Shown: positions 29,794-64,000, numbered from the stretch's first letter. The stretch is 64,000 bases of DNA from IMGVR_UViG_3300021959_006017:1-64000; one strand, 5' to 3'. Notes: generated by a model not told the origin, from the sequence alone. Numbers and translations: made by a program.

Positions 29794-32700
29794 ATGGCAT
29801 TAGTATCACCCGGTGTAGAGGTTAACGTAATTGACGAAAGTTTTTACACCCCAGCAGCAGCAGGCACAGTTCCTGTAATATTTGTTGCTTCTGCCAGCAA
29901 TAAGACAAGTAGTTCAGGATCGGGTATTGCTCCTGGTACAACGAAAGCTAATGCTGGACGAGCATATTTAATCACTAGTCAAAGAGAGCTAGGAGAAACA
30001 TTTGGAGATCCGGTCTTCAAGTCTGATAACAATGGTAACATGATCCATGCAGGCGAGCAAAACGAATACGGACTTCAAGCAGCATACAGTTTATTAGGTG
30101 TAACAAACTCAGTATACGTTGTAAGAGCAGACTTAGATCTAGGAGAACTAGATCCTAGTGCAACTGCTCCAGAAGGCGAGCCAGCAGACGGCGCAAACTG
30201 GTTTGATACACAAATCACAAGTTTCGGCATTCTAGAATGGAATGCAGCACCGCTATCAACAACAGGCGGACAATCATTCACAGCACAGACAAGGATTGTT
30301 GTAACTGAAACATCAGACATTGATAGCATTACAGATGCTCCAAAGACTTCAATCGGTCAAATCGGAAATTACGCTGTAGATGCAACAACAACAATGAATC
30401 GTTTGTGGTACAAAACAGCTGGTACAAACACACTAGCAGGATCATCAGGTACATGGGTTGAAGTTGGTTCGGATGCATGGAAGGCAAGTCACTACACAGT
30501 ACGTGGCGCAAATACAAATCCAACTCTGCAAAATGGCGACACTATGTTAATCAACGAAACAACAGTACTATTAAGTGGTACAACTATTTCAGATATGGCT
30601 ACAGCTATTAACACTGCTGGCATTACAGGTGTTGCAGCAGCAGTTGTAGACAGTTCATTAGAAATATATGCAACAAGTGCAGCTATTAGTGACGAAGGTG
30701 GCGGCGGGACAACAGCCGACGGCAAACTAAAAATCGAAGGCGGTGTTGGAACATTAACTGGACCGTCAGACACTGCATCTGACGCTGGTGCATTAGGTAT
30801 TGTTGAAAAAACATACCAGTCACCGCAGCTAGCCATTCAATCACATACAAGTGTACCTGCATTTAAGTCAACTGACACAGATCCTGCACCAACAGGCAGC
30901 ATTTGGATTAAAACAACCAATCCAAATGGTGGAGCAGAGTTTAGTGTTAAACAATATAATGAAGATACTCAACTATGGAACTCCATAGATGCTCCTATGT
31001 ATACAACAGCTGAAGGTGCTATTTACGATCTTGATAAAACAGGCGGTACAGCACTAAGAGCTGGTGATTTGTTTGTAAAAGCAAACGTAGAAGAAGAAGA
31101 CCCATCCATTTCAAACTTTAAGATTTATGTTCGTAATGGAACAGGCGCTACTTCTGCAAAGAGTGCTAAGATTACTACTCAACTTACAGCAAGCACATAT
31201 ACATTTGATCTTGCAGAAACAGTTGCAAACGATAATGCACTAGGTACACCAAAAACTATTTCTGTAACAACAACAGCAGCAAGTGCAGACGCTGATGTTA
31301 TTGCAGGTGAGATCAACGCAGCAGGATTTACAAATATTGTATCTTATGTTGATAGCACAAATAAAGTAGTTATTGAACACAAACTAGGCGGTGAGATTCG
31401 TGTAGATGATACAGATGGATTGATCGCACTAGCAGGTTTTGCAGCATATAATTACACTACCGAAGAAGGAACAGCAAACTTTTATGATGCTCCAACAGGC
31501 GATGATGTGTATGACTATGTAATCAGCTTATGGAAAGAACTAAGCTACACAGCTAGTGAAGATGCTCCATCAAGTCTTACTGAAGATGGTAAGATCTGGT
31601 ATAGTTCTGTTGTAGACGAAGTTGACATGATGATTCATGATGGTAGCAACTGGGTTGGATACCAAAACTTTAGTTCAGATTATGCAGACTGTGATCCAGA
31701 AGGACCGATTGTAAGTGCAACTGAACCTACTGAACAGTCAGACGGAACAGCACTAGTAGATGGCGATGTTTGGATTGATACTTCAACTATTGAAGAATAT
31801 CCAGGTGTTTACATTTATAACGCTGTACTAGAAAGTTGGGTACAAAGAGATATCACAGATCAAACAACTGATAATGGTGTATTGTTTGCAGATGCACGTT
31901 GGAGTGATGCAGGTTCTAACTCAGCAGCAGGATATTGTAGATCTACTAACAAGTGACTACTTAGATCCAGATGCTCCAGATCCAGCACTATATCCAAAAG
32001 GTATGTTGCTATGGAACATGCGTAGAAGCGGATTTAATGTTAAAGAATTCCGTCGTAACTATATTGATACATCAGGTGACAACGGGCGTTATCAAGTTAT
32101 TGGTGCAAGTGGTTCTTTAGAAGATGAATCAATGAGCGGTTACTATGCAAACCGTTGGGTTACTGCTTCAGGTAACAACGAAGATGGATCAGGTACATTT
32201 GGACGTCATGCAGTACGCAAGACTGTTGTACAGGCTCTACAAGCAGAAGTTAACAGCAATGTTGATATTAGAGATGAAGAATCACGTCAGTTTAACTTGA
32301 TTGCTTGCCCAGGTTATTCAGAACTAATCGGCGAAATGATTAGTCTAAACTATGACAGACGTCTAACAGCGTTTGTTGTTGGTGATACACCAGCAAGACT
32401 AACACCAGATGCAACTTCACTAAATGAGTGGGCAACTAACGTTGCTGGCGCAGTTGAAGATAATGATGATGGTGCAGTTAGCCGTGATGAATACTTAGGT
32501 ATGTATTATCCATGGGGCTTCACAAGCGACAACTTAGGAAACAATGTTGTTGTTCCACCAAGTCATATGGCACTACGCACTATCATACTAAACGACCAAG
32601 TTGCTTATCCGTGGTTTGCACCAGCAGGTACAAGACGTGGCGGTGTTACAAACGCAACAAGTTCAGGATATGTTACAAGTGAAGGCGAGTTCCAAACTGT

Positions 32701-33145
32701 TTCACTTAACACTGGACAACGTGACACACTATACAGCAACAATATTAACCCGATTACATTTATTAATGGAGCAGGACTAGTTGTATTTGGTCAGAAAACT
32801 CGTGCTAGAAACGCAAGTGCGCTAGACAGAATCAACGTAGCAAGACTAACAGTTTACCTACGTGGACAACTAGAACTTCTTGCAAGACCTTACTTGTTTG
32901 AACCAAATGACAAGATCACACGTGATCAAGTTAAAGCAGCAGCAGATGCTCTGCTACTAGAACTAGTTGGTCTAAGAGCGATTTATGACTACTTATCAGT
33001 ATGTGATGAATCAAACAATACTCCAGCAAGGATTGATAGAAATGAACTATACTTAGACATTGCTATTGAGCCAGTAAAAGCTATCGAGTTTATCTACATA
33101 CCGTTGCGTATTAAGAACACAGGAGAGATTGCAGCACTAGGTTAA
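29794..33145 (+). CDS. gp18: Tail sheath protein (T4 gp18-like), split by a frameshift at ~31930 into ORFs 29794..31956 and 31874..33145
   Basis: N-terminal MALVSPGVEV.VIDES, ITSQREL..TFG.P; C-terminal YYPW, VPPS, WFAPAG..RG, RD.LY.NNINPI, G.VVFGQKT, ALDRINV.RL, FEPND..TR, CDESNNTP..ID.NEL..DI.I.P.KA.EFI.I. GGTAAATA at 29752 and AGGAG upstream. Confidence 0.9.
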
Positions 33146-37131: not shown

Positions 37132-38139
37132 ATGTCAAATATGAAAAAACTAATAGAGTCATTGGATGCATTAAATGAATGCCCTCCAGGAATGGACGAA
37201 GGCGGCATGCCAATGGGATCACTTCCTGCGCCAATAGACAAAGGTAATCCAGTAACAATGAACGTGAGCTTAAATGCAAGCGGCAAAGAGCATGTTGAAG
37301 ATCTAATCAACATGATGAAAAATGCAGGTATGAGCGATGCTAAAGAATTTGGGCAAGACGATATGCCAGCACTTCCAATGCGTATGGACATGGAAAGACT
37401 ACGTGATATTGTAGGCGAACCAGGCGATGAAGATACAGACGAAGCCTATTCACCAGGTGACGAAAATGCAGAAGGTGTTGTAAGTAACTGTTGTGGTGCG
37501 CCTGTTCAAGATGAGCGTGAAGGAACTGGTAGATGCAGTGCTTGCGGAGAAGGTTGCGAGGCTGTTGCAGAAGAATCAATCGAAGAAGGTGGAATGAAAG
37601 ATCAGCTTATCAAGGCAATGGAAAAGATTGCAGCTGATGACAGCGGAGATACACTTTATAAAGCAATGACCAAAGGTGCAATGGGCCCAGATGTACAAAA
37701 CTATCTACAAGATATGTACGATGACGTAGCACGTGATAATGGACTACACCCAGATGATGATCACGATCAAATAGAAGAAAAAATGCATGAACTGATCGCA
37801 GCAGATTATGGAATGCAAGAATGGGCCAACTCACCAGAAGGTTCAGAAGACGATGTAGACTATCGTGATCAAGACTACATGACAAACATGATGGGCGACG
37901 ATCTACACAAGAAAAAGAAAGCATATGCAGCCGCACAAGACGGCGATAATGCAATGGCTGTTGAAGCTATCAAAGCACAGCTAATGAAAGCACTTAGTGA
38001 AAAGAAAAAGCCAGACGCAAATAAAAACGGTATTCCTGATTATGCAGAAGATGGCAAAGGACCGAACGATCTTGCTAAAGGTAAAAAGGGCGGTAAGCCT
38101 AAAAAAGGTAAAGTACCTCCGCAATTTAAGAAAAAATAA
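37132..38139 (+). CDS. Acidic hypothetical protein, possible head core/internal protein
   Basis: D/E/M-rich; internal CC..C..C..C module; basic K-rich tail. Confidence 0.5.
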   Translation: MSNMKKLIESLDALNECPPGMDEGGMPMGSLPAPIDKGNPVTMNVSLNASGKEHVEDLINMMKNAGMSDAKEFGQDDMPALPMRMDMERLRDIVGEPGDEDTDEAYSPGDENAEGVVSNCCGAPVQDEREGTGRCSACGEGCEAVAEESIEEGGMKDQLIKAMEKIAADDSGDTLYKAMTKGAMGPDVQNYLQDMYDDVARDNGLHPDDDHDQIEEKMHELIAADYGMQEWANSPEGSEDDVDYRDQDYMTNMMGDDLHKKKKAYAAAQDGDNAMAVEAIKAQLMKALSEKKKPDANKNGIPDYAEDGKGPNDLAKGKKGGKPKKGKVPPQFKKK

Positions 38140-38159
38140 ACTACGATGGGAGCGGAATC

Positions 38160-38187
38160 AAATAGGCACTTCGGTGCCTATTTTTTT
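38160..38187 (+). terminator. Rho-independent terminator with C(UUCG)G tetraloop
   Basis: AAATAGGCAC-TTCG-GTGCCTATTT then T-run; UUCG loops are typical of T4-like phages. Confidence 0.88.
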
Positions 38188-38200
38188 GAGTAAATACTGT

Positions 38201-39781
38201 ATGAGTAAGAGTTTAGATGGCGTATTAACTAAAAAAGCCAACACTAAAGAAACATATACAGAAGAACAAATACAGGATCTAATGCAGTGTATGGATCCTG
38301 AAAAAGGCTATCTGTATTTTGCAAGTAAGTTTGCATATATCCAACATCCTGTAAAAGGAAAACTACTATTCGAACCTTACGAATATCAACTAGGGTTAAT
38401 GGATACATATCATAACTATCGCTTTAACATTAATATGATGCCTAGACAAACAGGTAAAACTACTTGTGCCGCAATTTATCTTGCTTGGTATGCAATGTTT
38501 AATCCAGATCAAACTATACTTATTGCCGCACACAAATACACAGGTGCGCAGGAGATTATGGCACGTATTCGTTATGTGTATGAAACGTGTCCAGATCATA
38601 TTAGAGCAGGTGTTACTTCATATAACAAAGGTAGCATAGAGTTTGAGAATGGATCACGTATTGTAAGTCAGACAACAACAGGCAACACAGGACGTGGTAT
38701 GTCAATCTCGCTACTATACTGTGACGAGTTTGCGTTCGTACAGCCTAACATTGCTGAAGAGTTTTGGACGTCAATATCACCTACACTAGCAACAGGTGGT
38801 CGTGCTATTATTACTAGTACACCAAACTCAGACGAAGATACATTTGCTACTATTTGGAAACAAGCAGAACAACGGTTTGACGATCACGGCAACGAAAGTG
38901 ATCTTGGCATCAATGGCTTCCGTTCATTTATAGCACACTGGAGTGAACATCCCGATCGTGACGAGAAATGGAAGGCAGATGAGATCGGACGTATCGGTGA
39001 AGAAAAGTTTAGACGTGAATATGGTTGCGAGTTCTTAGTATTTGACGAAACTCTCATTAATAGTATAAAACTAAGTGCTATGGAAGGCGGCAGTCCTATA
39101 CTTAACATGGGGCAAACACGTTGGTATAAGAAGCCGACAAGTCAATACACATATGCAGTAGCACTTGATCCTAGTATGGGTACAGGAGGCGACTATGCGG
39201 CAATTCAAGTTATAGAACTTCCAACATACGAGCAAGTAGGAGAATGGCAGCATAACCAAACAGCTATTCCCGGACAAATAAGAGTACTTGCAGACATCTG
39301 TACATACATTGCAAATGAAACTAAAAATCCAAATGGAGTTTATTGGAGTGTAGAAAATAACGGCATCGGCGAAGCAGCACTAATCGTTATAAACGATTTC
39401 GGGGAAGAGAATATACCGGGACTTTTTGTCTCTGAACCTATTCGCAAAGGACATGTGCGCAAGTTCCGCAAAGGGTTTAATACTACACACAGCACAAAGA
39501 TTACAGCATGTAGTCGTTTAAAAACTATGATTGAAAACGATAAAATGACTGTACACAGCAAACCATTAATATCTGAACTCAAAGGTTTTATAGCATCAGC
39601 AAGTAGCTATCAAGCAAAACCGGGAATGACAGACGATTTAGTAAGTGCAACACTACTTGCTATAAGAATGATGGACGTATTAAAAGATTGGGATCCGCGG
39701 GTATATAACTCATTCAATCAAGCAGAAGATCTTGAGGATTATGAGATGCCCATGCCAATCTTTATTAGCAGCAACTATTGA
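38201..39781 (+). CDS. gp17: Terminase large subunit
   Basis: YEYQ (Q motif), PRQTGKTT Walker A, LLYCDEFAF Walker B, ITSTPN, FRREYGCEF, LDPSMG.GGDY, VENN, DDLVSA; start ATG 38201 behind AGTAAATA. Confidence 0.95.
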   Translation: MSKSLDGVLTKKANTKETYTEEQIQDLMQCMDPEKGYLYFASKFAYIQHPVKGKLLFEPYEYQLGLMDTYHNYRFNINMMPRQTGKTTCAAIYLAWYAMFNPDQTILIAAHKYTGAQEIMARIRYVYETCPDHIRAGVTSYNKGSIEFENGSRIVSQTTTGNTGRGMSISLLYCDEFAFVQPNIAEEFWTSISPTLATGGRAIITSTPNSDEDTFATIWKQAEQRFDDHGNESDLGINGFRSFIAHWSEHPDRDEKWKADEIGRIGEEKFRREYGCEFLVFDETLINSIKLSAMEGGSPILNMGQTRWYKKPTSQYTYAVALDPSMGTGGDYAAIQVIELPTYEQVGEWQHNQTAIPGQIRVLADICTYIANETKNPNGVYWSVENNGIGEAALIVINDFGEENIPGLFVSEPIRKGHVRKFRKGFNTTHSTKITACSRLKTMIENDKMTVHSKPLISELKGFIASASSYQAKPGMTDDLVSATLLAIRMMDVLKDWDPRVYNSFNQAEDLEDYEMPMPIFISSNY

Positions 39782-55438: not shown

Positions 55439-55807
55439 ATGACAATGAAAGCAGGAAAGATATGGGGACAAACTGAACTAATACACGCTAATGGTGTATT
55501 AGAGTTTCACCGTATAGAGTTTAAAAAAGGATATAAATGTAGCGAGCATGAGCATCGTTATAAATGGAATGGATTCTTTGTTGAATCGGGCAAGATGATT
55601 GTTCGCGTTTGGCAAGATGCAGATCAAGAAGGGTTAGTTGATGAAACTATTCTTGAAGCTGGAGACTTCACACAGGTGAAGCCAGGAAAAATTCACCAGT
55701 TTGAAGGTTTAGAAGATGGTGTCGCTTTTGAACTTTACTGGGCTGAATTTAATCACGATGACATTGTTCGTCGTACAATAGGCACAGAAGTAAAAGGAAA
55801 AAAATAA
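55439..55807 (+). CDS. Cupin-domain protein
   Basis: GKIWG.T, CSEH.H..KWNGF.VESG, V.PG..HQF. Confidence 0.75.
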   Translation: MTMKAGKIWGQTELIHANGVLEFHRIEFKKGYKCSEHEHRYKWNGFFVESGKMIVRVWQDADQEGLVDETILEAGDFTQVKPGKIHQFEGLEDGVAFELYWAEFNHDDIVRRTIGTEVKGKK

Positions 55808-56506
55808 ATGTTTACAAAACTACTAGAAGGTGTTGACAAAACACTTGTTAGAAATCTAGTTATTTTACACACGTTAGTTATTGCGGTGTCAAATTATCTA
55901 GTTACCATTCGATTTGATTTGTTCCCAGGAGCAGATCTACCGTTGTTTGGATCATTTCCATTAGCGGCGGCAGCGTTTACGTTTCCGATCGTAGTAGTGG
56001 CAACTGACCTTACTGTAAGGATGGTTGGTAAAGAAGCAGGTAGAGCCGTTGTAGCAATGGCTATTATTCCAGCTATTGTAGCATCAGTTCTTGTGCTGTT
56101 AGCACTAGGTGATGAACATGCTTACAGAGTAGGGTTTGCATCAGGTACAGCATATGCTATCGGTACAATGCTTGACGTATATGTATTCCAACATATTAGA
56201 GAGAAGTGGAGCGAAGCATGGTGGGCAGCCCCGGCGATTTCAACTATCGTGGCTAACATCATTGACACATATTCATTCTTTTATGTAGCATTTGCAGGTT
56301 CAACAGACGCAGAAGGCAACTTAACTTGGATTGGTGAAAACTGGCACATTGTTGCACAGAACAATACACTGACTAAGGTTGTAGTTGGCTTGATTGTATT
56401 CCTGCCAGCATATGGTGTACTCCTTGCATACTTGAAAAATCGAGTAGCGCCAACACCAGTAGAAGAAGCGCCTAAGAAGCGTGGACGTAAAAAGGCCACA
56501 AAATAA
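55808..56506 (+). CDS. yhhQ: Queuosine precursor (preQ0/preQ1) transporter, VUT family
   Basis: Multi-TM; IAVSNYLV, AFTFP....ATDLTVR..G...R, R...AS..AY..G..LDV.VF, WW.AP..ST...N..DT..FF..AF. Confidence 0.85.
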   Translation: MFTKLLEGVDKTLVRNLVILHTLVIAVSNYLVTIRFDLFPGADLPLFGSFPLAAAAFTFPIVVVATDLTVRMVGKEAGRAVVAMAIIPAIVASVLVLLALGDEHAYRVGFASGTAYAIGTMLDVYVFQHIREKWSEAWWAAPAISTIVANIIDTYSFFYVAFAGSTDAEGNLTWIGENWHIVAQNNTLTKVVVGLIVFLPAYGVLLAYLKNRVAPTPVEEAPKKRGRKKATK

Positions 56507-56763
56507 TGGGTGAGCTTCTACCAGGAGAAGCATTGATATACGAGCGTAGCAATGGAGTTGTCTACGCTCGTTATCGCGACAAGCCAGAAATAGAACGATG
56601 GGTAATAGGAGGAGATCCAGGTGCAGTGGCTAGAGCACAAGGTCGATTATGCGACTATAGTGAATGGCAAAAACTGTGTGATATGTGTGTAGAACATCCT
56701 ACGCTAATGAAACTTATGGACCAACTTGTAACAACATATTATATTATGAAGGACGACAAATGA
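56506..56763 (+). CDS. Hypothetical protein
   Basis: 85 aa, coupled to both neighbours. Confidence 0.55.
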   Translation: MGELLPGEALIYERSNGVVYARYRDKPEIERWVIGGDPGAVARAQGRLCDYSEWQKLCDMCVEHPTLMKLMDQLVTTYYIMKDDK

Positions 56764-57086
56764 AATATGAACAATGGGATATAGGAGGAGAAGTTGTAAA
56801 AGCAGACGATCGCTATGTTGTAAAAGACAATACACTTCTTAACAACTTAATAGTAAGTAGTACAAACTTAAAACCCGGGAAATCAACAACAGGCCACAAG
56901 CATGAAGGTCAAGAAGAAGTATACATTTTTGTAAAAGGCCATGGAGTAATGCAGATAGACGATGAACGATTTGATGTAAATGAAGGCGATACAGTCTTAA
57001 TACAAGACGGAGTCTTTCATCGTGTGTATGCAGGTACAACAGGTTGTTATTTTATTTGTGTATTTGACGGAAGGAGAACCCATTGA
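56760..57086 (+). CDS. Cupin-domain protein
   Basis: L.PG.ST.GH.H.GQEEVY.F..G.G.M.ID...V..GD.V.I..G.FH.V. Confidence 0.8.
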   Translation: MKYEQWDIGGEVVKADDRYVVKDNTLLNNLIVSSTNLKPGKSTTGHKHEGQEEVYIFVKGHGVMQIDDERFDVNEGDTVLIQDGVFHRVYAGTTGCYFICVFDGRRTH

Positions 57087-57856
57087 GAATTATTGCAGGA
57101 CCGTGCCAACATGAAAGTTTAGAAAAAAGTTTAGAAATCGCAAAAGAATGTAAACGAGTTTGTCACAAACTCGGCATTGAATATTATTTTAAAGCAAGCT
57201 ATGATAAAGCCAATCGCACAAACATAAAGGGCGAAAGAGGTAAAGGTATTGGTTGCTTAGAAGATTTTAAAACTTTAAAAGAAGAAATACCTGGTCTTAA
57301 AACATTAACAGATGTACATGACAGTATGCAAGTTAATGTTATTCAATATCATTATAACGACTGTGTTGATGTACTACAGATACCTGCCTTTCTTTGTCGT
57401 CAAACAGATTTGATTAAAACAGCAGTTGATACAGGCAAGATAGTTAATATTAAAAAAGGACAGTTCTTAGCACCTTGGGACGTAGCAGGTATCCTTTCAA
57501 AAACAGAAGGTGCTAAAGAAGTATGGATTACTGAAAGGGGAACTAGCTTTGGATATAATACTTTGGTCGTTGATTTCACTGGCATGCAGTATATGCTTGA
57601 TACCTATAATGTTCCTATTGTTTTTGATGTTACCCACTCGGTTCAACGCCCGGGAGGAAATGGCAGTAGTAGCGGCGGCAATAGGGGGTATGTCCCTGGC
57701 CTATCTCGCGCTGCATCTGCAATGGGTATAACAGACTTCTTCTTAGAAGTACACGCTGACCCGGATAATGCACCCAGTGACGGTGCTAATATGTTACGCT
57801 TAGAAGATTTTGAAAGGACAGTAGATGACATCCACCGCTATTCTTATACCGGCTAG
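57083..57856 (+). CDS. kdsA: KDO-8-phosphate synthase
   Basis: IAGPC..ES, FKASYDKANRT, TDVH, LQIPAFLCRQTDL, NIKKGQFLAP, TERGTSFGY..LVVD, FDVTHSVQ.PGG.G..SGG.R, F.EVH..P..APSDG; TTG start after AAGGAG. Confidence 0.95.
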   Translation: MRIIAGPCQHESLEKSLEIAKECKRVCHKLGIEYYFKASYDKANRTNIKGERGKGIGCLEDFKTLKEEIPGLKTLTDVHDSMQVNVIQYHYNDCVDVLQIPAFLCRQTDLIKTAVDTGKIVNIKKGQFLAPWDVAGILSKTEGAKEVWITERGTSFGYNTLVVDFTGMQYMLDTYNVPIVFDVTHSVQRPGGNGSSSGGNRGYVPGLSRAASAMGITDFFLEVHADPDNAPSDGANMLRLEDFERTVDDIHRYSYTG

Positions 57857-58517
57857 ATATGCAAGCACACGCCTGCATGGAAAGCCTATGCTTGAGTTAG
57901 ATGGCATACCTATGATAAAGCGTGTGTATGACGCTTGTATAGCGTCTAACCTGCCAACATTTGTGCTTACTGACCACCAAGACATATACAACTATATGGG
58001 TGCCGGCAAGTGCATTATGGACACAGCAGATTATGAAAACGGCACAGAAAGATGTGCAGGTGCAGTAGCAAGCCGTGTGTTTGATGACTTTGATCAGTTT
58101 ATAAATGTACAAGGTGATATGCCAGATGTAACAGTTAACATGATTCATAAGTGCATAGTTAGTCTTAATCAATACGAAGTAAGTACAGTGTACACCGAAA
58201 TGCCTGAAGAAGAACAAAACAAGCCAAGTAGTGTAAAGATGGTTAGAGCAGGAGATCAGGCTCTGTGGTTTGGTAGAGGTATGACAGGCTACGGTGATTG
58301 GCACTTAGGTGTTTACGGTTATCGCAAGACTGCACTACAAGCATATCCGCATCTACGTATAGAACAAGAAGAACGTGTAGAAAAACTTGAACAGTTGCGT
58401 TGGCTAAAAAGTGGTTGGCAAATAGGTTGTTTGAGTGTATACTTTAATGGTGTAGAGATTAATACTGAACACGATGTTAACTTATGGAAGTACAAGCATG
58501 CCAAACAAGCACATTGA
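57825..58517 (+). CDS. kdsB: CMP-KDO synthetase
   Basis: IPARYASTRL.GKP, GTERC, INVQGD.P, H.GVYGYR, E..EKLEQLR.L. Confidence 0.92.
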   Translation: MTSTAILIPARYASTRLHGKPMLELDGIPMIKRVYDACIASNLPTFVLTDHQDIYNYMGAGKCIMDTADYENGTERCAGAVASRVFDDFDQFINVQGDMPDVTVNMIHKCIVSLNQYEVSTVYTEMPEEEQNKPSSVKMVRAGDQALWFGRGMTGYGDWHLGVYGYRKTALQAYPHLRIEQEERVEKLEQLRWLKSGWQIGCLSVYFNGVEINTEHDVNLWKYKHAKQAH

Positions 58518-58962
58518 TTTATTCAAAGAAATGATTCCAGCACTAGATGGCGGAATGCGTGATTTGTGGGATGCCGCAGGCGAAGAAGGTCAAAAAGAGA
58601 TTAAGGGCGATTTGTGGAATCTAAATCGATACATGAGTAGTGTTACAGGATCGCGTGACAAACAAGAACTTGCTGTGTTTAAAACAAATGAATACTACAA
58701 CAAAAACTGGGCTGTGTTAGGAAACAAAGAGCCTAAGTTACAATGGCTACTACTTTGTCAGTGCGGCAACACAGGACGTAAAGAGTTTCATCCGTGGATA
58801 GGGTTTAAAAAGAAAACTAATAACAATGCCGGACTAAAACTTTTACAACAAATTTATCCTAATATGAAACAAGACGAGGTTGAGCTACTTGCTAGATTAT
58901 CTACAAAAAAAGAACTCAAAGAACTGGCTGAAGAGCATGGCATCGAAAACGTCAAACTCTGA
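58498..58962 (+). CDS. Clamp-loader small subunit-like (T4 gp62-like)
   Basis: LNRYMS, NE..N, KLQW.LL, FHPWI..KKK, L...YP....E.ELL..L....ELK. Confidence 0.55.
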   Translation: MPNKHIDLFKEMIPALDGGMRDLWDAAGEEGQKEIKGDLWNLNRYMSSVTGSRDKQELAVFKTNEYYNKNWAVLGNKEPKLQWLLLCQCGNTGRKEFHPWIGFKKKTNNNAGLKLLQQIYPNMKQDEVELLARLSTKKELKELAEEHGIENVKL

Positions 58963-59638
58963 TAAGCCATATGTATGTGAATACTGCGGTAGTGGTTATG
59001 TAAGAGAAAAAACTCTTGCTGCTCATATGTGTGAACCAAAGCGTAGAGCATTACAAAAAGATGAGAAACGTGTAAGGCACGGGTTTTATGCATTTCAGAG
59101 GTTCTACAAACTGAGTGCAGGCACAAAGAAGGAAAAAACATATGAAGACTTTTGTAAATCACAGTACTATAATGCTTTCGTCAAGTTTGGTTCGTTTATC
59201 AATAATGTGCGTCCTTTATATCCTGAGCGTTATATTGATCATGTCGTTACTAGTGGAGTAAAGCTCGATCACTGGTGCAAAGAAGAAATGTACGAAAAAT
59301 ATGCACTTGAACTTATTCTTAAAGAAGACGTAACAACTGCTTTAGAAAGAAGTGTAAAAAACATGATGGAATGGGCAGATGAAAATAATAGTGTATGGAA
59401 TCATTATTTCTTCTATGTAAGTTTGAACAGAGCTGTATGGCATATTAAAGACGGAAAAGTAAGTCCTTGGCTCATACTTAACTGCAAGAGCGGAAAAGAG
59501 ATGCTAAGTAAATTTAACGATGAACAACTAGAACTTGTGTATCATGTGATTAATCCAGAGCATTGGGCAATGCGATTTAATCGTAATCCAAGTGATGTTG
59601 CACTTGTTCGTGATATTGTAAAGGAAAGCAATCTATGA
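58937..59638 (+). CDS. Hypothetical protein with N-terminal zinc finger
   Basis: YVCEYCG..Y.RE.TL.AH.C. Confidence 0.6.
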   Translation: MASKTSNSDKPYVCEYCGSGYVREKTLAAHMCEPKRRALQKDEKRVRHGFYAFQRFYKLSAGTKKEKTYEDFCKSQYYNAFVKFGSFINNVRPLYPERYIDHVVTSGVKLDHWCKEEMYEKYALELILKEDVTTALERSVKNMMEWADENNSVWNHYFFYVSLNRAVWHIKDGKVSPWLILNCKSGKEMLSKFNDEQLELVYHVINPEHWAMRFNRNPSDVALVRDIVKESNL

Positions 59639-60087
59639 AAATATTGATTATGGGCCTGCCAGGCGCAGGTAAAACTTGGCTGGCTGAAAGACTACAAAAA
59701 CATTTGCCTGATTGTGCATGGTTTAATGCAGACGAAGTTCGCAAGATGGCAAATGACTGGGAGTTTAGTGAAGACGCAAGAATAAGACAGTCTCGTCGTA
59801 TGCGTAACTTAGCAGATTACGAAAAGGGGTGCGGGCGTAATGTTATTTGCGACTTTGTTTGTCCAACTGAACTTACACGCCATATCTTTGAAGCAGATAT
59901 TACTGTTTGGGTTGACACTATTAAAGAAGGAAGATTTGAAGATACTAATAAAATGTTTGAAGAACCTAAAACTGTTGATTTTAGAATAGATAAACATCTA
60001 AGCGAAGACGACGGCGAAGTAGAAAATCTAGCAAGTGCTATTCAAGCATTAAGAATATATGACGACGGAACTATTACAGGTTGTTAA
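59635..60087 (+). CDS. cysC: Adenylyl-sulfate (APS) kinase-like protein
   Basis: MGLPGAGKT P-loop, NADEVR, FS...R.RQ..R, VICDFVCP, FEEP...D. Confidence 0.7.
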   Translation: MKILIMGLPGAGKTWLAERLQKHLPDCAWFNADEVRKMANDWEFSEDARIRQSRRMRNLADYEKGCGRNVICDFVCPTELTRHIFEADITVWVDTIKEGRFEDTNKMFEEPKTVDFRIDKHLSEDDGEVENLASAIQALRIYDDGTITGC

Positions 60088-60302
60088 TGGAAGAAAAAGT
60101 ATCAGCAAAGCGCCATTTAGCAAAAGCAGTTACATGGCGTATTATAGCAAGTATTACCACAGCACTTATTGCTTGGACGTTCGGATTGCCTCCAAAGGCT
60201 GTCGGAGCAGTATTCATAGCAGACTTAATCATTAAGTTTGTTTTGTATTATGCTCACGAACGTATGTGGTACAAACATATTAAATATGGAGTTAAAGAAT
60301 GA
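60087..60302 (+). CDS. DUF2061-like small membrane protein
   Basis: R.LAKAVTWR..AS..T, K..LYY.HER.W....G. Confidence 0.75.
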   Translation: MEEKVSAKRHLAKAVTWRIIASITTALIAWTFGLPPKAVGAVFIADLIIKFVLYYAHERMWYKHIKYGVKE

Positions 60303-60712
60303 GTTTTGATTGGAAAAAGCCTACAACACAAATGTTAGGCAGATGGCAGCCGTGGCATGATGGTCATACTGCACTATTTAAAAAAGCATATGCAGAAACC
60401 GGCCAAGTTGCTATTATGATAAGAAATGTCGGAGGTATTATTGGAGAAGATGCTGGCGGCGGCCGTACAGTAAAACAAGACGACAATCCTTTTGATCTAA
60501 GCACAGTTACTAAAAATATTATTGCAGGATTAAAAGAACACGGCTTTAAACACGACGAAGATTATGTAATCATTGTTGTACCGAATATTGTAGATATTAG
60601 TTATGGACGAGGTGTTGGATATACCTTCACAGAACACGACTTAGGCAAAGACATACATGATATCAGTGCAACTAAGATTAGAGCAAAACTAAGGGAAGAA
60701 GGTAACCTATAA
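60299..60712 (+). CDS. HxGH nucleotidyltransferase (cytidylyltransferase-like)
   Basis: GRWQPWHDGH, NPF, I.YGR.VGY, ISATKIR. Confidence 0.75.
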   Translation: MSFDWKKPTTQMLGRWQPWHDGHTALFKKAYAETGQVAIMIRNVGGIIGEDAGGGRTVKQDDNPFDLSTVTKNIIAGLKEHGFKHDEDYVIIVVPNIVDISYGRGVGYTFTEHDLGKDIHDISATKIRAKLREEGNL

Positions 60713-60713
60713 A

Positions 60714-61211
60714 ATGGAACTAATATATCATCCAAATGATTTTCTTAACAAGGAAGTTAAAACTGTTGATTTAGAAAACCCAGGATTTGATCCTAAGGAA
60801 CTTAAAAAAGAAATGGTAGACTTTATGCTAGAAAAAAATGGCATAGGACTAAGTGCTAACCAAATCGGACTAGATGCAAAAGTTTTTGTAATGGGTGATA
60901 AAGTAGAAAACTCTACTATTTGTATTAATCCAACAGTCTTACAGTATACAAGCGATACACAAAATGATTATGAAGGCTGTTTAAGTTTTCCGAATATATA
61001 CATGCGTATTACAAGACCTAAAGAAATACTTGCAGAGTTTTATGACGAAAACTTAGAAAAACAAACTGTAAAGATTACAGACTATAGTGCTAAGTGTTAT
61101 TTGCACGAACTTGATCACCTGTTAGGTATTACATTTAAAGATCGTGCAAGTAAACTTAAATGGGATATGGCTGTGAAGAAAGCACGTAAACTAGAGAAGC
61201 AGTATGCCTGA
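60714..61211 (+). CDS. def: Peptide deformylase
   Basis: GIGLSANQIG, EGCLSFP, HELDHL.G. Confidence 0.93.
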   Translation: MELIYHPNDFLNKEVKTVDLENPGFDPKELKKEMVDFMLEKNGIGLSANQIGLDAKVFVMGDKVENSTICINPTVLQYTSDTQNDYEGCLSFPNIYMRITRPKEILAEFYDENLEKQTVKITDYSAKCYLHELDHLLGITFKDRASKLKWDMAVKKARKLEKQYA

Positions 61212-61773
61212 TATTGATATAGATTTTGCAGATAGAGATGTTGTATTAGAAAAGATACAACATCGTGTTGCAAAACTAGACTCAGGCAAGAAGCACAATA
61301 CAGGTGTTTATGCTACAGAGATACCTCATAATCCTGTAGACAATCTAGCCACAATCGATTATAAGACAGCAGAAGAACGTGGATATTTTAAACTAGACTT
61401 TCTCAATGTTAGCATCTATAAAGATGTTAAAGACGAAGCACACTTGCAACAACTTATGGAAAAAGAACCACAATGGGAACTTTTACAACACAACGATTTC
61501 ACAGATCTTATCTTTCATATCTCTGGTCACGGAGATATACTACAAAAAACAAAGCCTACAAACATCGAACAACTAGCAGCAGTACTAGCGATGATACGGC
61601 CTGCCAAACGCCATCTTGTCAACGAAACTTGGCCAACGATATTAGAAAGTGTGTGGGTCGCACCCACTGACGGAAGTTACTACTTTAAGAAAGCACATGC
61701 TATTGCATATGCTGTAAGTGTTGTAGTTCATATGAACTTACTATGTGAACAGCTGGCTAGCGAGGTTTCTTAA
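61204..61773 (+). CDS. Miniature DNA polymerase III alpha (DnaE)-like protein, 189 aa
   Basis: MPDIDIDF, KH.TGV, G.FKLDFL, KP..IE.LAA.LA.IRP, Y.F.KAHA.AYA: DnaE palm/finger motifs in order. Confidence 0.78.
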   Translation: MPDIDIDFADRDVVLEKIQHRVAKLDSGKKHNTGVYATEIPHNPVDNLATIDYKTAEERGYFKLDFLNVSIYKDVKDEAHLQQLMEKEPQWELLQHNDFTDLIFHISGHGDILQKTKPTNIEQLAAVLAMIRPAKRHLVNETWPTILESVWVAPTDGSYYFKKAHAIAYAVSVVVHMNLLCEQLASEVS

Positions 61774-62125
61774 CTAGTTGGATTGATTTTCTTTTTACTC
61801 TTTTTAAACTTAAATCATTTAAGTTGACACACGGACCAATAACTATTCTTACATCTTTTGAGTTCATTGTAACAATAGAATATTTAAACGGATCCATATC
61901 TCGTTTTAAAAAAATGTTTATTGGAATAAGTCGATTAGATTCCCACCACCATGCTTCTCCTAGCTCTAAGAACACTCGTTGTTCTTCAGGAGTTCTAAGA
62001 TTAGTATAAACGTACATGGACGTGACAGTCGAATCTTGGTTAATCACTATACCTACAAACTCTTGCCCTCCGTAGGTAATAACCGATAGAAACGGAAATT
62101 TTTCTTGTATTTCTTTTGTTAACAT
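61757..62125 (-). CDS. Conserved hypothetical protein
   Basis: FPFLS...YG..E.VGI..NQD, FLELGE.WWWESNR.IPINIFL. Confidence 0.6.
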   Translation of the reverse strand: MLTKEIQEKFPFLSVITYGGQEFVGIVINQDSTVTSMYVYTNLRTPEEQRVFLELGEAWWWESNRLIPINIFLKRDMDPFKYSIVTMNSKDVRIVIGPCVNLNDLSLKRVKRKSIQLVKKPR

Positions 62126-62146
62126 AGTTTCCCGATAAATAATATT

Positions 62147-62914
62147 ATGCAATTAATACCTAGATATTTAGTCACAAATAGAATCAACATTGTCGCAGAT
62201 GTGGCAGGATTCATTACGGAGTATAGACCAGTGTACAATAAACAAATACAACTTTATAAAGGCGTTGACAATGTTATAGAGTTTAAAGTTCTCAACGCAG
62301 ATCAAAAAGCAGTAGACATAAGTTCATACACACCGACTGTGTATGCATTTGGAGAAGATAAAACACTGCTTATAGAAAAACAAGGAGTAGTATCCGCAAC
62401 TAAAGGAGTGTTTACTGTAACTATTACAGAAAGCGACTTGCTTAATATTAAACAACAGTATCTAGGTTATAATGTATTGCTAAACACAGACTCCGGAAAA
62501 ACATTAACATACGCTCACAGTAACTTTGATAATGATGCTACAATGTTTATTAATGCTAGAACAATGCCTGGTCCATTAGCAACATACGAAGTTACACAGT
62601 TTGCCGAAACAGCAGTAAACAGTGATGTATGGGTTAGCGAAAGTATAACAGCACAGCCTGCTATCAATGGCAACGAAGCACTACATACAGCAGCCGTATA
62701 TACAGACGGTTATGCTGGAGATGTTACTGTACAAGCAACACTTGACAATCAAGTAACAGGTAACACTGTATGGGCAAACGTAAGCACACTAACATTTACA
62801 GGGTCAGAAACACAACCTACACCTGTTAACTTTAATGGTGTATACAGTTATTTAAGATTCAAAACAGACGCAGATCCTGCTAGTACTATAACAAAGGTTT
62901 TGGTCAGAAATTAG
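62147..62914 (+). CDS. Probable virion structural protein
   Basis: Late motif GATAAATA at 62134; LYKGVDN.IEF.V.N.DQK; beta-rich. Confidence 0.5.
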   Translation: MQLIPRYLVTNRINIVADVAGFITEYRPVYNKQIQLYKGVDNVIEFKVLNADQKAVDISSYTPTVYAFGEDKTLLIEKQGVVSATKGVFTVTITESDLLNIKQQYLGYNVLLNTDSGKTLTYAHSNFDNDATMFINARTMPGPLATYEVTQFAETAVNSDVWVSESITAQPAINGNEALHTAAVYTDGYAGDVTVQATLDNQVTGNTVWANVSTLTFTGSETQPTPVNFNGVYSYLRFKTDADPASTITKVLVRN

Positions 62915-63796: not shown

Positions 63797-64000
63797 ATGA
63801 GTGTAGTAAACGATACAGTTCTGACATACCTTCCTGCAAAGCGTAAGCAATCGCCGAGCGGATGGATCTCCTTCAATGCGCCGTGCTGTCATCATAACGG
63901 ACACTCTGTGGATACTCGCGGTAGAGGCGGTTTGATATCTAATGCCGATGGTAGTGTTAGCTATCACTGCTTCAACTGCGGTTTCAAAGCAAGCTGGCAA
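63797..64000 (+). CDS. DNA primase N-terminal zinc-binding domain (gp61-like), 3'-truncated; absent from the ORF track
   Basis: MSVVNDTVLTYLPAKRKQSPSGWISFNAPCCHHNG...RGRGG....SYHCFNCGFKASW. Confidence 0.75.
   Translation, partial: MSVVNDTVLTYLPAKRKQSPSGWISFNAPCCHHNGHSVDTRGRGGLISNADGSVSYHCFNCGFKASWQ

What the first reader, a model, noticed from the sequence alone, without database searches (positions are those of the whole stretch)
61204..61773. 189-aa miniature DnaE-like polymerase
Starts exactly at the catalytic PDIDIDF motif and keeps KH..GV, KLDFL (third Asp), IRP and F.KAHA.AY motifs in order, but with the large intervening segments removed and no PHP, clamp-binding or OB domains (cellular DnaE exceeds 1000 aa). 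Internal compaction with intact motifs argues against a decayed fragment. Inference: a minimal C-family nucleotidyltransferase used for primer extension, repair or another transfer reaction alongside the main replicase; clamp-loader and primase genes are nearby.
Basis: partly seen in the sequence, partly recalled or inferred. Interest (0 to 1): 0.62.

Follow-up and report, generated by a model that had tools for sequence, protein, structure and literature searches.

The report
Half of split mini DNA polymerase
This 189-residue gene is not a stand-alone miniature polymerase: it is the C-terminal half of a two-gene, stripped-down Pol III-alpha-like enzyme already described (by computation only) in T4-like jumbo phages, and its other half lies 121 kb away in the same phage genome.

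Summary
The ORF and all its DnaE-like motifs are real. The window is the first 64 kb of a 236.7-kb uncultivated marine/estuarine jumbo myovirus. The protein starts at MPDIDIDF because the gene is split there. A 185-aa partner, 'piece A' (G000:C1:183127-183684), carries the N-terminal half of the palm with the GRGS nucleotide-binding motif. It ends at the DnaE position just before the point where the focal 'piece B' begins. A and B co-occur in the same ~95 isolated jumbo phages, always tens to hundreds of kb apart. Each has about 500 or more relatives in IMG/VR and is under purifying selection (omega 0.14 for B, 0.18 for A). A complex model scores 0.92 against 0.01 for the best control. Rare natural 375-376-aa A+B fusions exist. 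No PHP, beta-binding or OB domain was detected in the 67%-complete record, and the thumb is reduced to a loop. A family B replicase is encoded at about 211 kb. Iyer et al. 2021 (Viruses 13:63) already described this 'split minimal Pol III alpha' of group 2.2 jumbo phages, so this is a new member of a known but biochemically untested kind.

The parts
61204..61773 (+). Piece B: C-terminal subunit (189 aa) of the split minimal Pol III alpha-like polymerase. It holds the metal-binding half of the palm plus a reduced fingers domain.
   Evidence: ORF; phrog_11778 E 7.9e-62; VIA-align Z 8.3-8.8 to E. coli 400-784 and Mtb DnaE1 419-811; omega 0.14.
61207..61227 (+). PDIDIDF strand. D5 and D7 correspond to catalytic D401/D403 of E. 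coli Pol III alpha.
   Evidence: Aligned to MPDIDIDF of Mtb DnaE1. D3, D5 and D7 are invariant in 26 diverse homologues. Predicted to touch the W150-G151 (WGVGRGS) loop of piece A.
61291..61308 (+). KHNTGV strand, the palm strand that follows the thumb in DnaE. The preceding residues 21-33 are a low-confidence loop where the roughly 80-residue thumb would be.
   Evidence: H31 and G34 invariant; pLDDT below 50 at 26-31; model 1-187 spans E. coli 400-784.
61390..61404 (+). KLDFL. D65 is the third catalytic Asp (E. coli D555) and K63 is conserved.
   Evidence: K63 and D65 invariant; aligned to K-MDFL of Mtb DnaE1.
61594..61611 (+). IRPAKR finger motif, equivalent to the RPG motif of DnaE.
   Evidence: R132, P133 and K135 invariant; aligned to ALYRPGP of Mtb DnaE1.
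61678..61713 (+). YYFKKAHAIAYA finger motif, equivalent to Y.FNKSHA..Y of DnaE.
   Evidence: F161, H165 and Y169 invariant; aligned to YAFNKSHAAGY of Mtb DnaE1.
61757..62152 (-). Conserved small antisense ORF (131 aa, phrog_11637, function unknown) overlapping the 3' end of piece B. It is a syntenic marker of the 'B locus'.
   Evidence: phrog_11637 E 3.9e-31. The same arrangement occurs in PA5oct, 121Q and the fused-gene contigs.
62147..62914 (+). Virion structural protein (BppU_N-like), a conserved neighbour in the B locus.
   Evidence: PF10651 E 2.6e-5; phrog_14467; homologue downstream of the fused gene in L317.
63797..64000 (+). 5' end of a gp61/DnaG-type primase gene (333 aa, running past the window end). 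It is syntenic with piece B in PA5oct and 121Q.
   Evidence: phrog_47 DNA primase E 2.5e-7; annotated synteny; ORF length.

Best explanation
The ORF is the C-terminal subunit ('piece B') of a two-subunit, minimal Pol III alpha-like nucleotidyltransferase of a T4-like ('group 2.2') jumbo phage. The ancestral palm is cut inside the core Pol-beta-fold signature, between the G[GS] nucleotide-binding helix-turn and the DxD metal-binding strand. Piece A (185 aa, G000:C1:183127-183684, 121 kb downstream, outside the window) supplies the first palm strand and helices and the invariant GRGSS motif. Piece B supplies the three catalytic Asp (D5, D7, D65) and the finger residues that in DnaE hold the incoming dNTP and template. 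The two proteins are inferred to associate non-covalently by beta-sheet complementation into one composite active site of about 374 aa. It would have no PHP, thumb, clamp-binding or OB domain. Shown: homology, fold, conserved split point, co-occurrence, purifying selection, natural fusions. Supported in silico only: the heterodimer. Inferred: it is an active, poorly processive DNA polymerase that assists the phage's family B replicase. The job would be short-patch synthesis such as extending primers at the primosome, gap filling or repair. Piece B is syntenic with primase and helicase genes; piece A is syntenic with a DEDD exonuclease and the clamp loader. My confidence that it is half of the split enzyme is about 0.9. 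My confidence in templated DNA synthesis as the activity is about 0.55.
For: Piece A: PF07733 positions 20-94 at E 1.7e-9 and phrog_11127 at E 6e-37. Its profile aligns to E. coli Pol III alpha 269-392 and its model to 278-393 (Z 10.5-11.6; Mtb DnaE1 Z 12.9, rmsd 2.6). Piece B aligns from E. coli 400 onward, so the two abut. Co-occurrence: A is in 93 and B in 96 phage records, the same jumbo phages, 30-224 kb apart. IMG/VR holds at least 492 relatives of A and at least 563 of B. Split point: nearly all A proteins end at EF[LIM][KR] plus 0-2 residues, and B proteins carry DxDxD at residue 2-18. Selection: omega 0.14 for B and 0.18 for A. Invariant residues: G151, G153, R154, G155, S156, S157 in A; D3, D5, D7, K63, D65, R132, P133, K135, F161, H165, Y169 in B. 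Complex model: ipSAE 0.92 in three runs against a best control of 0.01. That mark was reached by 58 of 80 solved complexes and 2 of 110 mismatched pairs. Runs agree in at least 97% of contacts and partner pLDDT is at least 92. A150-151 touches B6-8 and A73-78 touches B37-40. Natural fusions: P0097, P0151 and P0152 (375-376 aa) on 4 contigs from 4 samples, sitting in the B-locus synteny. Other DnaE domains: no PHP hit reached the cut-off, HHH_6 gave no hit, and the finger domain was found only in the focal ORF. A family B polymerase frame of 892 aa is present. Prior description: Iyer et al. 2021, PMC7824862.
Against: There is no biochemical or genetic evidence for activity or for the heterodimer, here or in the literature I could search. 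The complex score may partly reflect the model's memory of intact DnaE palms and was obtained with my own alignments. The thumb is missing and the fingers are halved, which could abolish stable primer-template binding. The record is only about 67% complete (CheckV), so the absence of other DnaE domains in this phage is not proven; Iyer et al. report the same absence in complete genomes. No RNA data were available to show expression. The neighbouring genes are interspersed with structural genes, so synteny is weak evidence for function.
Confidence: 0.85

Rival explanations
1. One reading: the 189-aa protein is by itself a minimal C-family nucleotidyltransferase.
For: All three catalytic Asp and the finger motifs are present and conserved. 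The isolated chain is predicted to fold with pLDDT 83.6.
Against: It lacks the G[GS] motif and the first strand and helices of the Pol-beta-type palm. These are supplied by piece A. A co-occurs with B in essentially every genome. The complex model buries B residues 2-9 and 37-45 against A. Natural A+B fusions exist.
Confidence: 0.03
2. A and B form the heterodimer, but the enzyme is not a templated DNA polymerase. It could be a template-independent terminal transferase, another nucleotidyl transfer enzyme, or a non-catalytic replisome scaffold.
For: The thumb is lost and the fingers are about halved. There is no clamp-binding or OB domain. Pol-beta-fold enzymes are functionally versatile (general knowledge). 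A full family B replicase is already present.
Against: The finger residues that in DnaE contact the incoming dNTP and template (RP.K, F.K.H..Y) are invariant across 26 diverse homologues. That is not expected for a scaffold, or for an enzyme that ignores a template. Both genes lie in replication gene neighbourhoods.
Confidence: 0.12
3. The two pieces are joined after translation or transcription into one chain, by a split intein as in cyanobacterial DnaE, or by trans-splicing.
For: A known precedent exists for a dnaE gene split into two distant loci (cyanobacterial split-intein DnaE; general knowledge).
Against: A ends at ...EFL[KR] and B begins M-PDIDIDF, with 0-2 and 1-17 extra residues respectively. 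That leaves no room for a roughly 100-aa N-intein or a roughly 35-aa C-intein. There is no C/S/T nucleophile at the start of B. The whole lengths of A (73-185) and B (1-187) align to DnaE itself.
Confidence: 0.02
4. These are decaying fragments of a once-acquired bacterial dnaE, that is, pseudogene remnants.
For: CBB_328 (piece A) was earlier called a 'truncated' Pol III alpha (PMC5259590).
Against: Omega is 0.14 and 0.18. Length is tightly conserved. Relatives number more than 500 across phages of Pseudomonas, enterobacteria, Agrobacterium, Xanthomonas and Vibrio and in marine metagenomes. Catalytic residues are invariant.
Confidence: 0.01

Closest known systems
Split minimal DNA Pol III alpha of group 2.2 jumbo phages (Iyer, Anantharaman, Krishnan, Burroughs & Aravind 2021, Viruses 13:63, PMC7824862). 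Examples: PA5oct EST35_0220 + EST35_0288; 121Q gp16 + gp56; CBB_328.
   Same: Same two PHROG families (phrog_11778 / phrog_11127). Same split point. The genes are distant from each other. Same synteny (B next to primase/helicase; A next to a GroES-like gene and the clamp loader). Same genomic background: family B polymerase, gp32-like SSB, UvsX and UvsW. Identity to isolates is 32-51% for B and 30-57% for A.
   Different: Only the host genome differs: an uncultivated marine/estuarine phage with no close isolate (no megablast hit). The gap between the pieces is 121 kb. This study also found rare natural A+B fusions, which the passages I retrieved from that paper do not mention.
Bacterial replicative Pol III alpha / DnaE (E. 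coli 2HNH, T. aquaticus 2HPI/3E0D, M. tuberculosis DnaE1 5LEW) and PolC (3F2B).
   Same: Pol-beta-type palm with GRGS, DxD and a third Asp. Finger motifs RP(G) and F.K.H..Y. Structural alignment gives Z 8-13.
   Different: About 374 aa in two chains instead of 1,000-1,400 aa in one. No PHP, thumb, beta-binding HhH or OB/tau-binding domain. The fingers (E. coli 561-784) are compressed to about 119 residues.
Cyanobacterial split-intein DnaE (dnaE-n / dnaE-c). General knowledge, not tested here beyond sequence inspection.
   Same: A C-family polymerase gene in two distant loci of one genome.
   Different: There, full-size halves are ligated by a split intein at a different position. Here there are no intein sequences, the cut is inside the palm active site, and the halves presumably stay separate.
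Bacillus subtilis DnaE working beside PolC (general knowledge). This is a functional analogy only.
   Same: A second, less processive C-family polymerase that extends primase products before hand-off to the main replicase. Piece B is syntenic with the primase gene.
   Different: B. subtilis DnaE is a full-length enzyme, and the main replicase here is family B. The analogy is an inference and has not been tested.

Membership tests
C-family DNA polymerase catalytic core (Pol III alpha / DnaE / PolC) | Three catalytic aspartates (E. coli D401, D403, D555) | tested here: met
   D5, D7 and D65 are aligned to the DnaE motifs and invariant in 26 homologues.
C-family DNA polymerase catalytic core (Pol III alpha / DnaE / PolC) | G[GS] nucleotide-binding motif (GRGS) in the same polypeptide, upstream of DxD | tested here: not met
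   The motif is absent from the focal ORF, which starts at M-PDIDIDF. It is present and invariant in the separate piece A at G000:C1:183127-183684.
C-family DNA polymerase catalytic core (Pol III alpha / DnaE / PolC) | Palm and fingers fold | tested here: met
   VIA-align gives B 1-187 against E. coli 400-784 at Z 8.3 and against Mtb 419-811 at Z 8.8. A 73-185 against E. coli 278-393 gives Z 10.5-11.6 and against Mtb Z 12.9. The next unrelated hit is at Z 3.1 or below. Foldseek E-values were only 1.5e-3.
C-family DNA polymerase catalytic core (Pol III alpha / DnaE / PolC) | N-terminal PHP domain | tested here: not met
   PF02811 gave only a sub-threshold 14.7-bit hit, inside the KdsB-like ORF. 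The record is 67% complete.
C-family DNA polymerase catalytic core (Pol III alpha / DnaE / PolC) | Thumb domain (E. coli 433-510) | tested here: not met
   Only about 13 residues (21-33), with pLDDT below 50 at 26-31, lie between the DxD strand/helix and the KHNTGV strand.
C-family DNA polymerase catalytic core (Pol III alpha / DnaE / PolC) | Beta-clamp-binding/HhH and OB domains | tested here: not met
   PF14579 gave no hit in the genome. The protein ends right after the finger helix.
C-family DNA polymerase catalytic core (Pol III alpha / DnaE / PolC) | Template-directed DNA synthesis | not testable with these tools
   Needs biochemistry.
Split minimal Pol III alpha of group 2.2 jumbo phages (Iyer et al. 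2021) | [quoted passage not shown] | tested here: met
   A is at 183127-183684 and B at 61204-61773 of the same 236.7-kb record. The description is in PMC7824862.
Split minimal Pol III alpha of group 2.2 jumbo phages (Iyer et al. 2021) | Sequence membership in the phage-specific families | tested here: met
   phrog_11778 at E 7.9e-62 and phrog_11127 at E 6.1e-37. tblastn to PA5oct, Atu_ph07, 121Q, RaK2, XacN1 and SCTP-2.
Split minimal Pol III alpha of group 2.2 jumbo phages (Iyer et al. 2021) | T4-like replication background: family B polymerase, gp32-type SSB, UvsW-type helicase, clamp loader; no other Pol III alpha domains | tested here: met
   Family B polymerase frame of 892 aa. SSB, UvsX and helicase. 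gp44-like clamp loader. No PHP or HHH_6.
Split minimal Pol III alpha of group 2.2 jumbo phages (Iyer et al. 2021) | The two proteins reconstitute one enzyme | tested here: inconclusive
   In silico only. ipSAE is 0.92 against a best control of 0.01; that mark was reached by 58 of 80 solved complexes and 2 of 110 mismatched pairs. Natural fusions also exist. There is no experiment.
Split-intein DnaE | N- and C-intein halves flanking the split | tested here: not met
   No extra sequence at the C-terminus of A or the N-terminus of B.

The most novel reading that the evidence does not exclude
The A+B pair, and its rare natural 375-aa single-chain fusion, is a catalytically active DNA polymerase. 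It would be by far the smallest C-family polymerase, with an active site assembled from two polypeptides. It would act at the phage primosome to extend primase products before hand-off to the family B replicase. That would make it a viral analogue of the DnaE/PolC or Pol alpha/delta division of labour, and a candidate model for the ancestral Pol III core.
Probability: 0.3. Interest if true: 0.65.

Novelty: new member of a known kind. Interest (0 to 1): 0.3.

Why it matters
The family shows how far a C-family polymerase can be stripped down. About 374 residues remain, with no PHP, thumb or clamp-binding domain, and the active site is divided between two genes, yet the pair stays under strong selection in hundreds of jumbo phages. 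If active, it would define the minimal catalytic core of the bacterial replicase family and point to a two-polymerase replisome in T4-like jumbo phages. For this window, the main value is corrective. The 'miniature polymerase' is half an enzyme, the kind was published in 2021, and what is still missing is biochemistry. The naturally fused variant found here gives a convenient single-chain construct for that test.

Tried and rejected
- Pfam on piece B alone gave only sub-threshold hits.
- Foldseek against PDB gave no hit at E <= 1e-3, although the top 15 were all Pol III alpha/PolC. VIA-align was needed.
- Megablast of 9 kb around the gene against isolated phages found nothing.
- None of the 80 IMG/VR piece-B loci has piece A within 3 kb.
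- Literature searches for experimental work gave nothing beyond Iyer et al. 2021 and a 'truncated' remark in the CBB paper. I checked the jumbo/DnaE/split searches, the PA5oct omics paper and the 2026 jumbo-phage review.
- No RNA run holds the stretch, so expression could not be tested. Read laying (1,439 letters, contigs only) confirms the DNA but says nothing about transcripts.
- The tree of 97 B parts is unrooted, because DnaE outgroups align too poorly. The direction 'split first, fusion later' is therefore likely but not proven.
- L300, an unsplit DnaE-like ORF in another viral contig (27% identity, ADVDNDI motif), is an ordinary larger DnaE and not a member of this family.
- The split-intein, pseudogene and stand-alone readings were rejected (see rival explanations).
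- Genetic code 11 was used throughout. The large representative search was used once, because the claim 'always split' rests on the absence of fused relatives.

Full report
**1. Observation**

Window 61204-61773 (+) is a 189-aa ORF. Its ATG is the first possible start after an in-frame stop. It overlaps the stop codon of an upstream peptide deformylase gene (ATGCCTGA; phrog_2890).

- PDIDIDF (res 2-8)
- KHNTGV (30-35)
- KLDFL (63-67)
- IRPAKR (131-136)
- YYFKKAHAIAYA (159-170)

phmmer against PDB sequences aligns them collinearly to M. tuberculosis DnaE1 at 413-423, 567-664 and 759-787. A profile of 26 homologues does the same. Pfam on this protein alone stays below threshold. PHROGs places it in phrog_11778 'DNA polymerase' at E 7.9e-62, full length.

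An AlphaFold2 model (pLDDT 83.6, pTM 0.73) matches only C-family polymerases:
- Foldseek puts Pol III alpha/PolC in its top 15, but with E-values around 1.5e-3.
- VIA-align gives Z 8.8 to Mtb DnaE1 419-811 (183 aligned, rmsd 4.1) and Z 8.3 to E. coli Pol III alpha 400-784. The top 14 rows are all C-family, and the next row is Z 3.1.

So 187 residues stand for about 385 residues of E. coli alpha. Unitigs from independent estuary/marine metagenome runs tile the stretch, including the gene start, with no differences.

**2.

The window is bases 1-64000 of a 236,751-bp IMG/VR virus record that CheckV estimates as 67% complete. Searching that record with Pfam PF07733 gave two hits:
- the focal ORF, at profile positions 96-196;
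- a second frame at 183454-183681, at profile positions 20-95.

The second hit lies in a 185-aa ORF, 'piece A', at G000:C1:183127-183684. It matches PF07733 at E 1.7e-9 and phrog_11127 at E 6.1e-37. It ends ...WGVGRGSSVASYVLYLIGVHKINSIQYGLDWREFLR.

A profile of 33 homologues aligns A to E. coli alpha 269-392. Its AF2 model (pLDDT 86.6) aligns residues 73-185 to E. coli 278-393 (Z 10.5-11.6) and to Mtb DnaE1 305-413 (Z 12.9, rmsd 2.6). The next unrelated hit is Z 2.5.

Piece A therefore stops, and piece B starts, at adjacent positions of the DnaE palm. The cut falls between the GRGS nucleotide-binding motif and the DxD metal-binding strand, inside the core signature of Pol-beta-fold nucleotidyltransferases. 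That is why the focal ORF 'starts exactly at the catalytic motif'.

**3. The split is old, conserved and selected**

*Co-occurrence.* tblastn finds B in 96 and A in 93 isolated phage records. They are the same jumbo phages: PA5oct-like, Atu_ph07, Phosso, 121Q/PBECO4, RaK2, GAP32, CBB, XacN1, SCTP-2 and a Vibrio phage. The two genes are always separated, by about 31 kb in 121Q, 44 kb in PA5oct, 182 kb in Atu_ph07 and 224 kb in Phosso. IMG/VR holds at least 563 relatives of B and 492 of A. None of the 80 B loci has A within 3 kb.

*Size.*
- B is 185-192 aa in the 80 closest orthologues and 164-222 aa in all 147 sampled.
- A is 147-216 aa.

*Split point.* Nearly all A proteins end at EF[LIM][KR] plus 0-2 residues. 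Every split B of at least 180 aa carries DxDxD at residue 2-18.

*Selection (Nei-Gojobori).*
- B: median omega 0.14 (424 pairs).
- A: median omega 0.18 (2,223 pairs).

*Invariant residues.*
- B: D3, D5, D7, D10, H31, G34, K63, D65, R132, P133, K135, F161, H165, Y169.
- A: G151, G153, R154, G155, S156, S157.

This is not a decaying fragment.

**4. Do A and B work together?**

Three lines of evidence say yes.

1. They co-occur, as above.
2. A complex prediction scored ipSAE 0.92 in all three runs, against 0.01 for the best of three controls. That mark was reached by 58 of 80 solved complexes and 2 of 110 mismatched pairs. The runs agree in at least 97% of contacts, and partner pLDDT is at least 92. 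The contacts put A's W150-G151 (the GRGS loop) against B's I6-F8 (the DxD strand), and A 73-78 against B 37-40, which is sheet complementation. This supports binding but does not show it. It may partly reflect the model's memory of intact DnaE, and it used my own alignments.
3. The exhaustive representative search with B found 436 cluster representatives at E <= 1e-3. Nearly all of the top 150 are no longer than about 222 aa. One, P0097, is 375 aa. Its residues 15-180 match piece A (31% identity, E 9e-23) and residues 190-370 match B (37%, E 8e-26).

A word search seeded with P0097 found three such fused clusters of 375-376 aa. They lie on four contigs from four samples. Each fused gene is followed by a small antisense ORF overlapping its 3' end; on the longest contig (L317) that ORF and the next gene are homologous to the window's 131-aa antisense ORF and its structural protein. 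So the fusion sits in the 'B locus'.

In a quick IQ-TREE of 97 B parts, the fusions form one clade (SH-aLRT 100). That clade is nested in a supported 13-row set of otherwise split forms (SH-aLRT 96). The fusion is therefore probably secondary, but the tree is unrooted. Either way it is Rosetta-stone evidence that A and B are one functional unit.

**5. What is missing and what surrounds it**

In the record held, other DnaE domains are not found:
- PHP (PF02811): only a spurious sub-threshold hit.
- HHH_6 / beta-binding (PF14579): no hit.
- Finger domain (PF17657): the focal ORF only.

The thumb (E. coli 433-510) is replaced by a loop of about 13 residues with low confidence, B residues 21-33. 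A's first 72 residues have no structural match.

The main replicase is a family B polymerase, an 892-aa frame at about 210.8-212.1 kb.

The window itself is a T4-like jumbo myovirus. It carries:
- tail fibre, sheath and tube genes, and the terminase;
- a gp32-like SSB, UvsX, and a UvsW-like helicase;
- a sugar-metabolism and auxiliary gene block;
- then piece B, the antisense phrog_11637 ORF, a structural protein and the primase.

The order B, antisense ORF, structural protein, primase (followed by a gp41-like helicase in 121Q and an unannotated gene in PA5oct) is annotated in both PA5oct and 121Q.

Piece A is followed by a GroES-like gene, a MazG-like gene, a Bax1-I membrane protein, an Rv2179c-like DEDD 3'-5' exonuclease (185745-186308) and the gp44-like clamp loader (186305-187219). 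Similar A, chaperonin, clamp-loader synteny is seen in 121Q. 'Primase nearby' is correct.

**6. Mechanism**

*Shown:* homology and fold; a composite distribution of active-site motifs over two genes; conservation; selection.

*Supported in silico:* a non-covalent heterodimer.

*Inferred:* an active polymerase of low processivity, having no thumb and no clamp or OB domains, that assists the family B replicase. The invariant finger residues, which in DnaE contact the dNTP and template, argue for templated synthesis rather than a scaffold or an untemplated transferase. Synteny of B with primase/helicase and of A with exonuclease/clamp loader suggests a replisome-associated role such as primer extension, gap filling or repair. 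This is the same proposal as in the literature and remains untested.

**7. Comparison with what is known**

Iyer, Anantharaman, Krishnan, Burroughs and Aravind (Viruses 2021, 13:63; PMC7824862, sections 3.4.1 and 3.5, Fig. [quoted passage not shown] These phages have no other Pol III domains, and the authors suggest the enzyme cooperates with the family B polymerase in strand synthesis or repair.

The CBB genome paper had called piece A a 'truncated' Pol III alpha. I found no experimental follow-up.

The focal gene meets every testable criterion of that family (see the membership table). It fails 'complete C-family catalytic core in one polypeptide'. It is not a split-intein DnaE.

**8. Verdict**

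It is wrong in treating the 189-aa ORF as the whole enzyme and in placing a clamp loader nearby.
- Novelty: a new member of a known, computationally described kind.
- The only additions here are the quantitative conservation and selection data, the structure and complex models, and the rare natural A+B fusions.
- Interest is modest (0.3). The open question is biochemical: is this about 374-aa two-piece core an active polymerase, and what does it do?

Noticed in passing
L316:1066-2193, L317:519-1649, L318:1827-2957, L319:1292-2422 (metagenome contigs, not the window): Natural single-chain fusions of piece A + piece B (375-376 aa; P0097, P0151, P0152) on four contigs from four samples. They sit in the 'B locus' synteny and form one clade nested among split forms. 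The passages I retrieved from the 2021 paper mention only split forms.
   Followed up: partly
G000:C1:183127-187219 (outside the window; loci L001, L315): Piece A is followed by a 127-aa ORF of unknown function, a GroES-like gene, a MazG-like gene and a Bax1-I membrane protein. Next come an Rv2179c-like DEDD 3'-5' exonuclease (185745-186308) and the gp44-like clamp loader (186305-187219). The exonuclease could be a proofreading partner; this was not tested.
   Followed up: partly
window 29794-33145: The tail sheath (phrog_10581) is spread over two overlapping ORFs: 29794-31956 (profile positions 2-557) and 31874-33145 (profile positions 547-913). This could be a frameshift, an assembly error or a real two-gene arrangement. 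The terminase large subunit ORF 37997-39781 likewise overlaps an unscanned upstream ORF at 37132-38139.
   Followed up: no
window 59635-60712: The two halves of phrog_10255 ('kinase', 230 positions) are in separate ORFs: 59635-60087 (P-loop, positions 2-102) and 60299-60712 (cytidylyltransferase-like, positions 123-228). A 73-aa ORF that looks membrane-spanning by eye (not scanned) lies between them at 60081-60302. This is another apparently divided gene in the same phage.
   Followed up: no
window 55439-61211 and 12394-14187: A block of auxiliary metabolic genes separates the UvsW-like helicase from piece B. By my reading of the translations it includes two cupin-like ORFs, a KdsA-like ORF (57083-57856) and a KdsB-like ORF (57825-58517); these four were not scanned. 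Scanned members are the kinase/cytidylyltransferase pair and a peptide deformylase (60714-61211) whose stop overlaps the start of piece B. A Nol-like carbamoyltransferase lies at 12394-14187.
   Followed up: partly
window 61194-61241: In four metagenome runs the summed unitig depth jumps about 10-15-fold (for example 683 against about 40) over the roughly 40 nt that encode MPDIDIDF. Many contigs diverge just before 61204 and after 61238. Many related phages in the same samples share this motif-coding stretch, and their similarity begins at the gene start.
   Followed up: partly
P0122 (metagenome protein) and L300:501-1415: P0122 (233 aa) joins the first ~110 residues of a piece-B homologue to an unrelated C-terminus that looks like a pseudouridine synthase; it may be chimeric or frameshifted. 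L300 carries an unsplit, larger DnaE-like ORF (ADVDNDI motif, 27% identity to A) in a different 59.8-kb viral contig.
   Followed up: no
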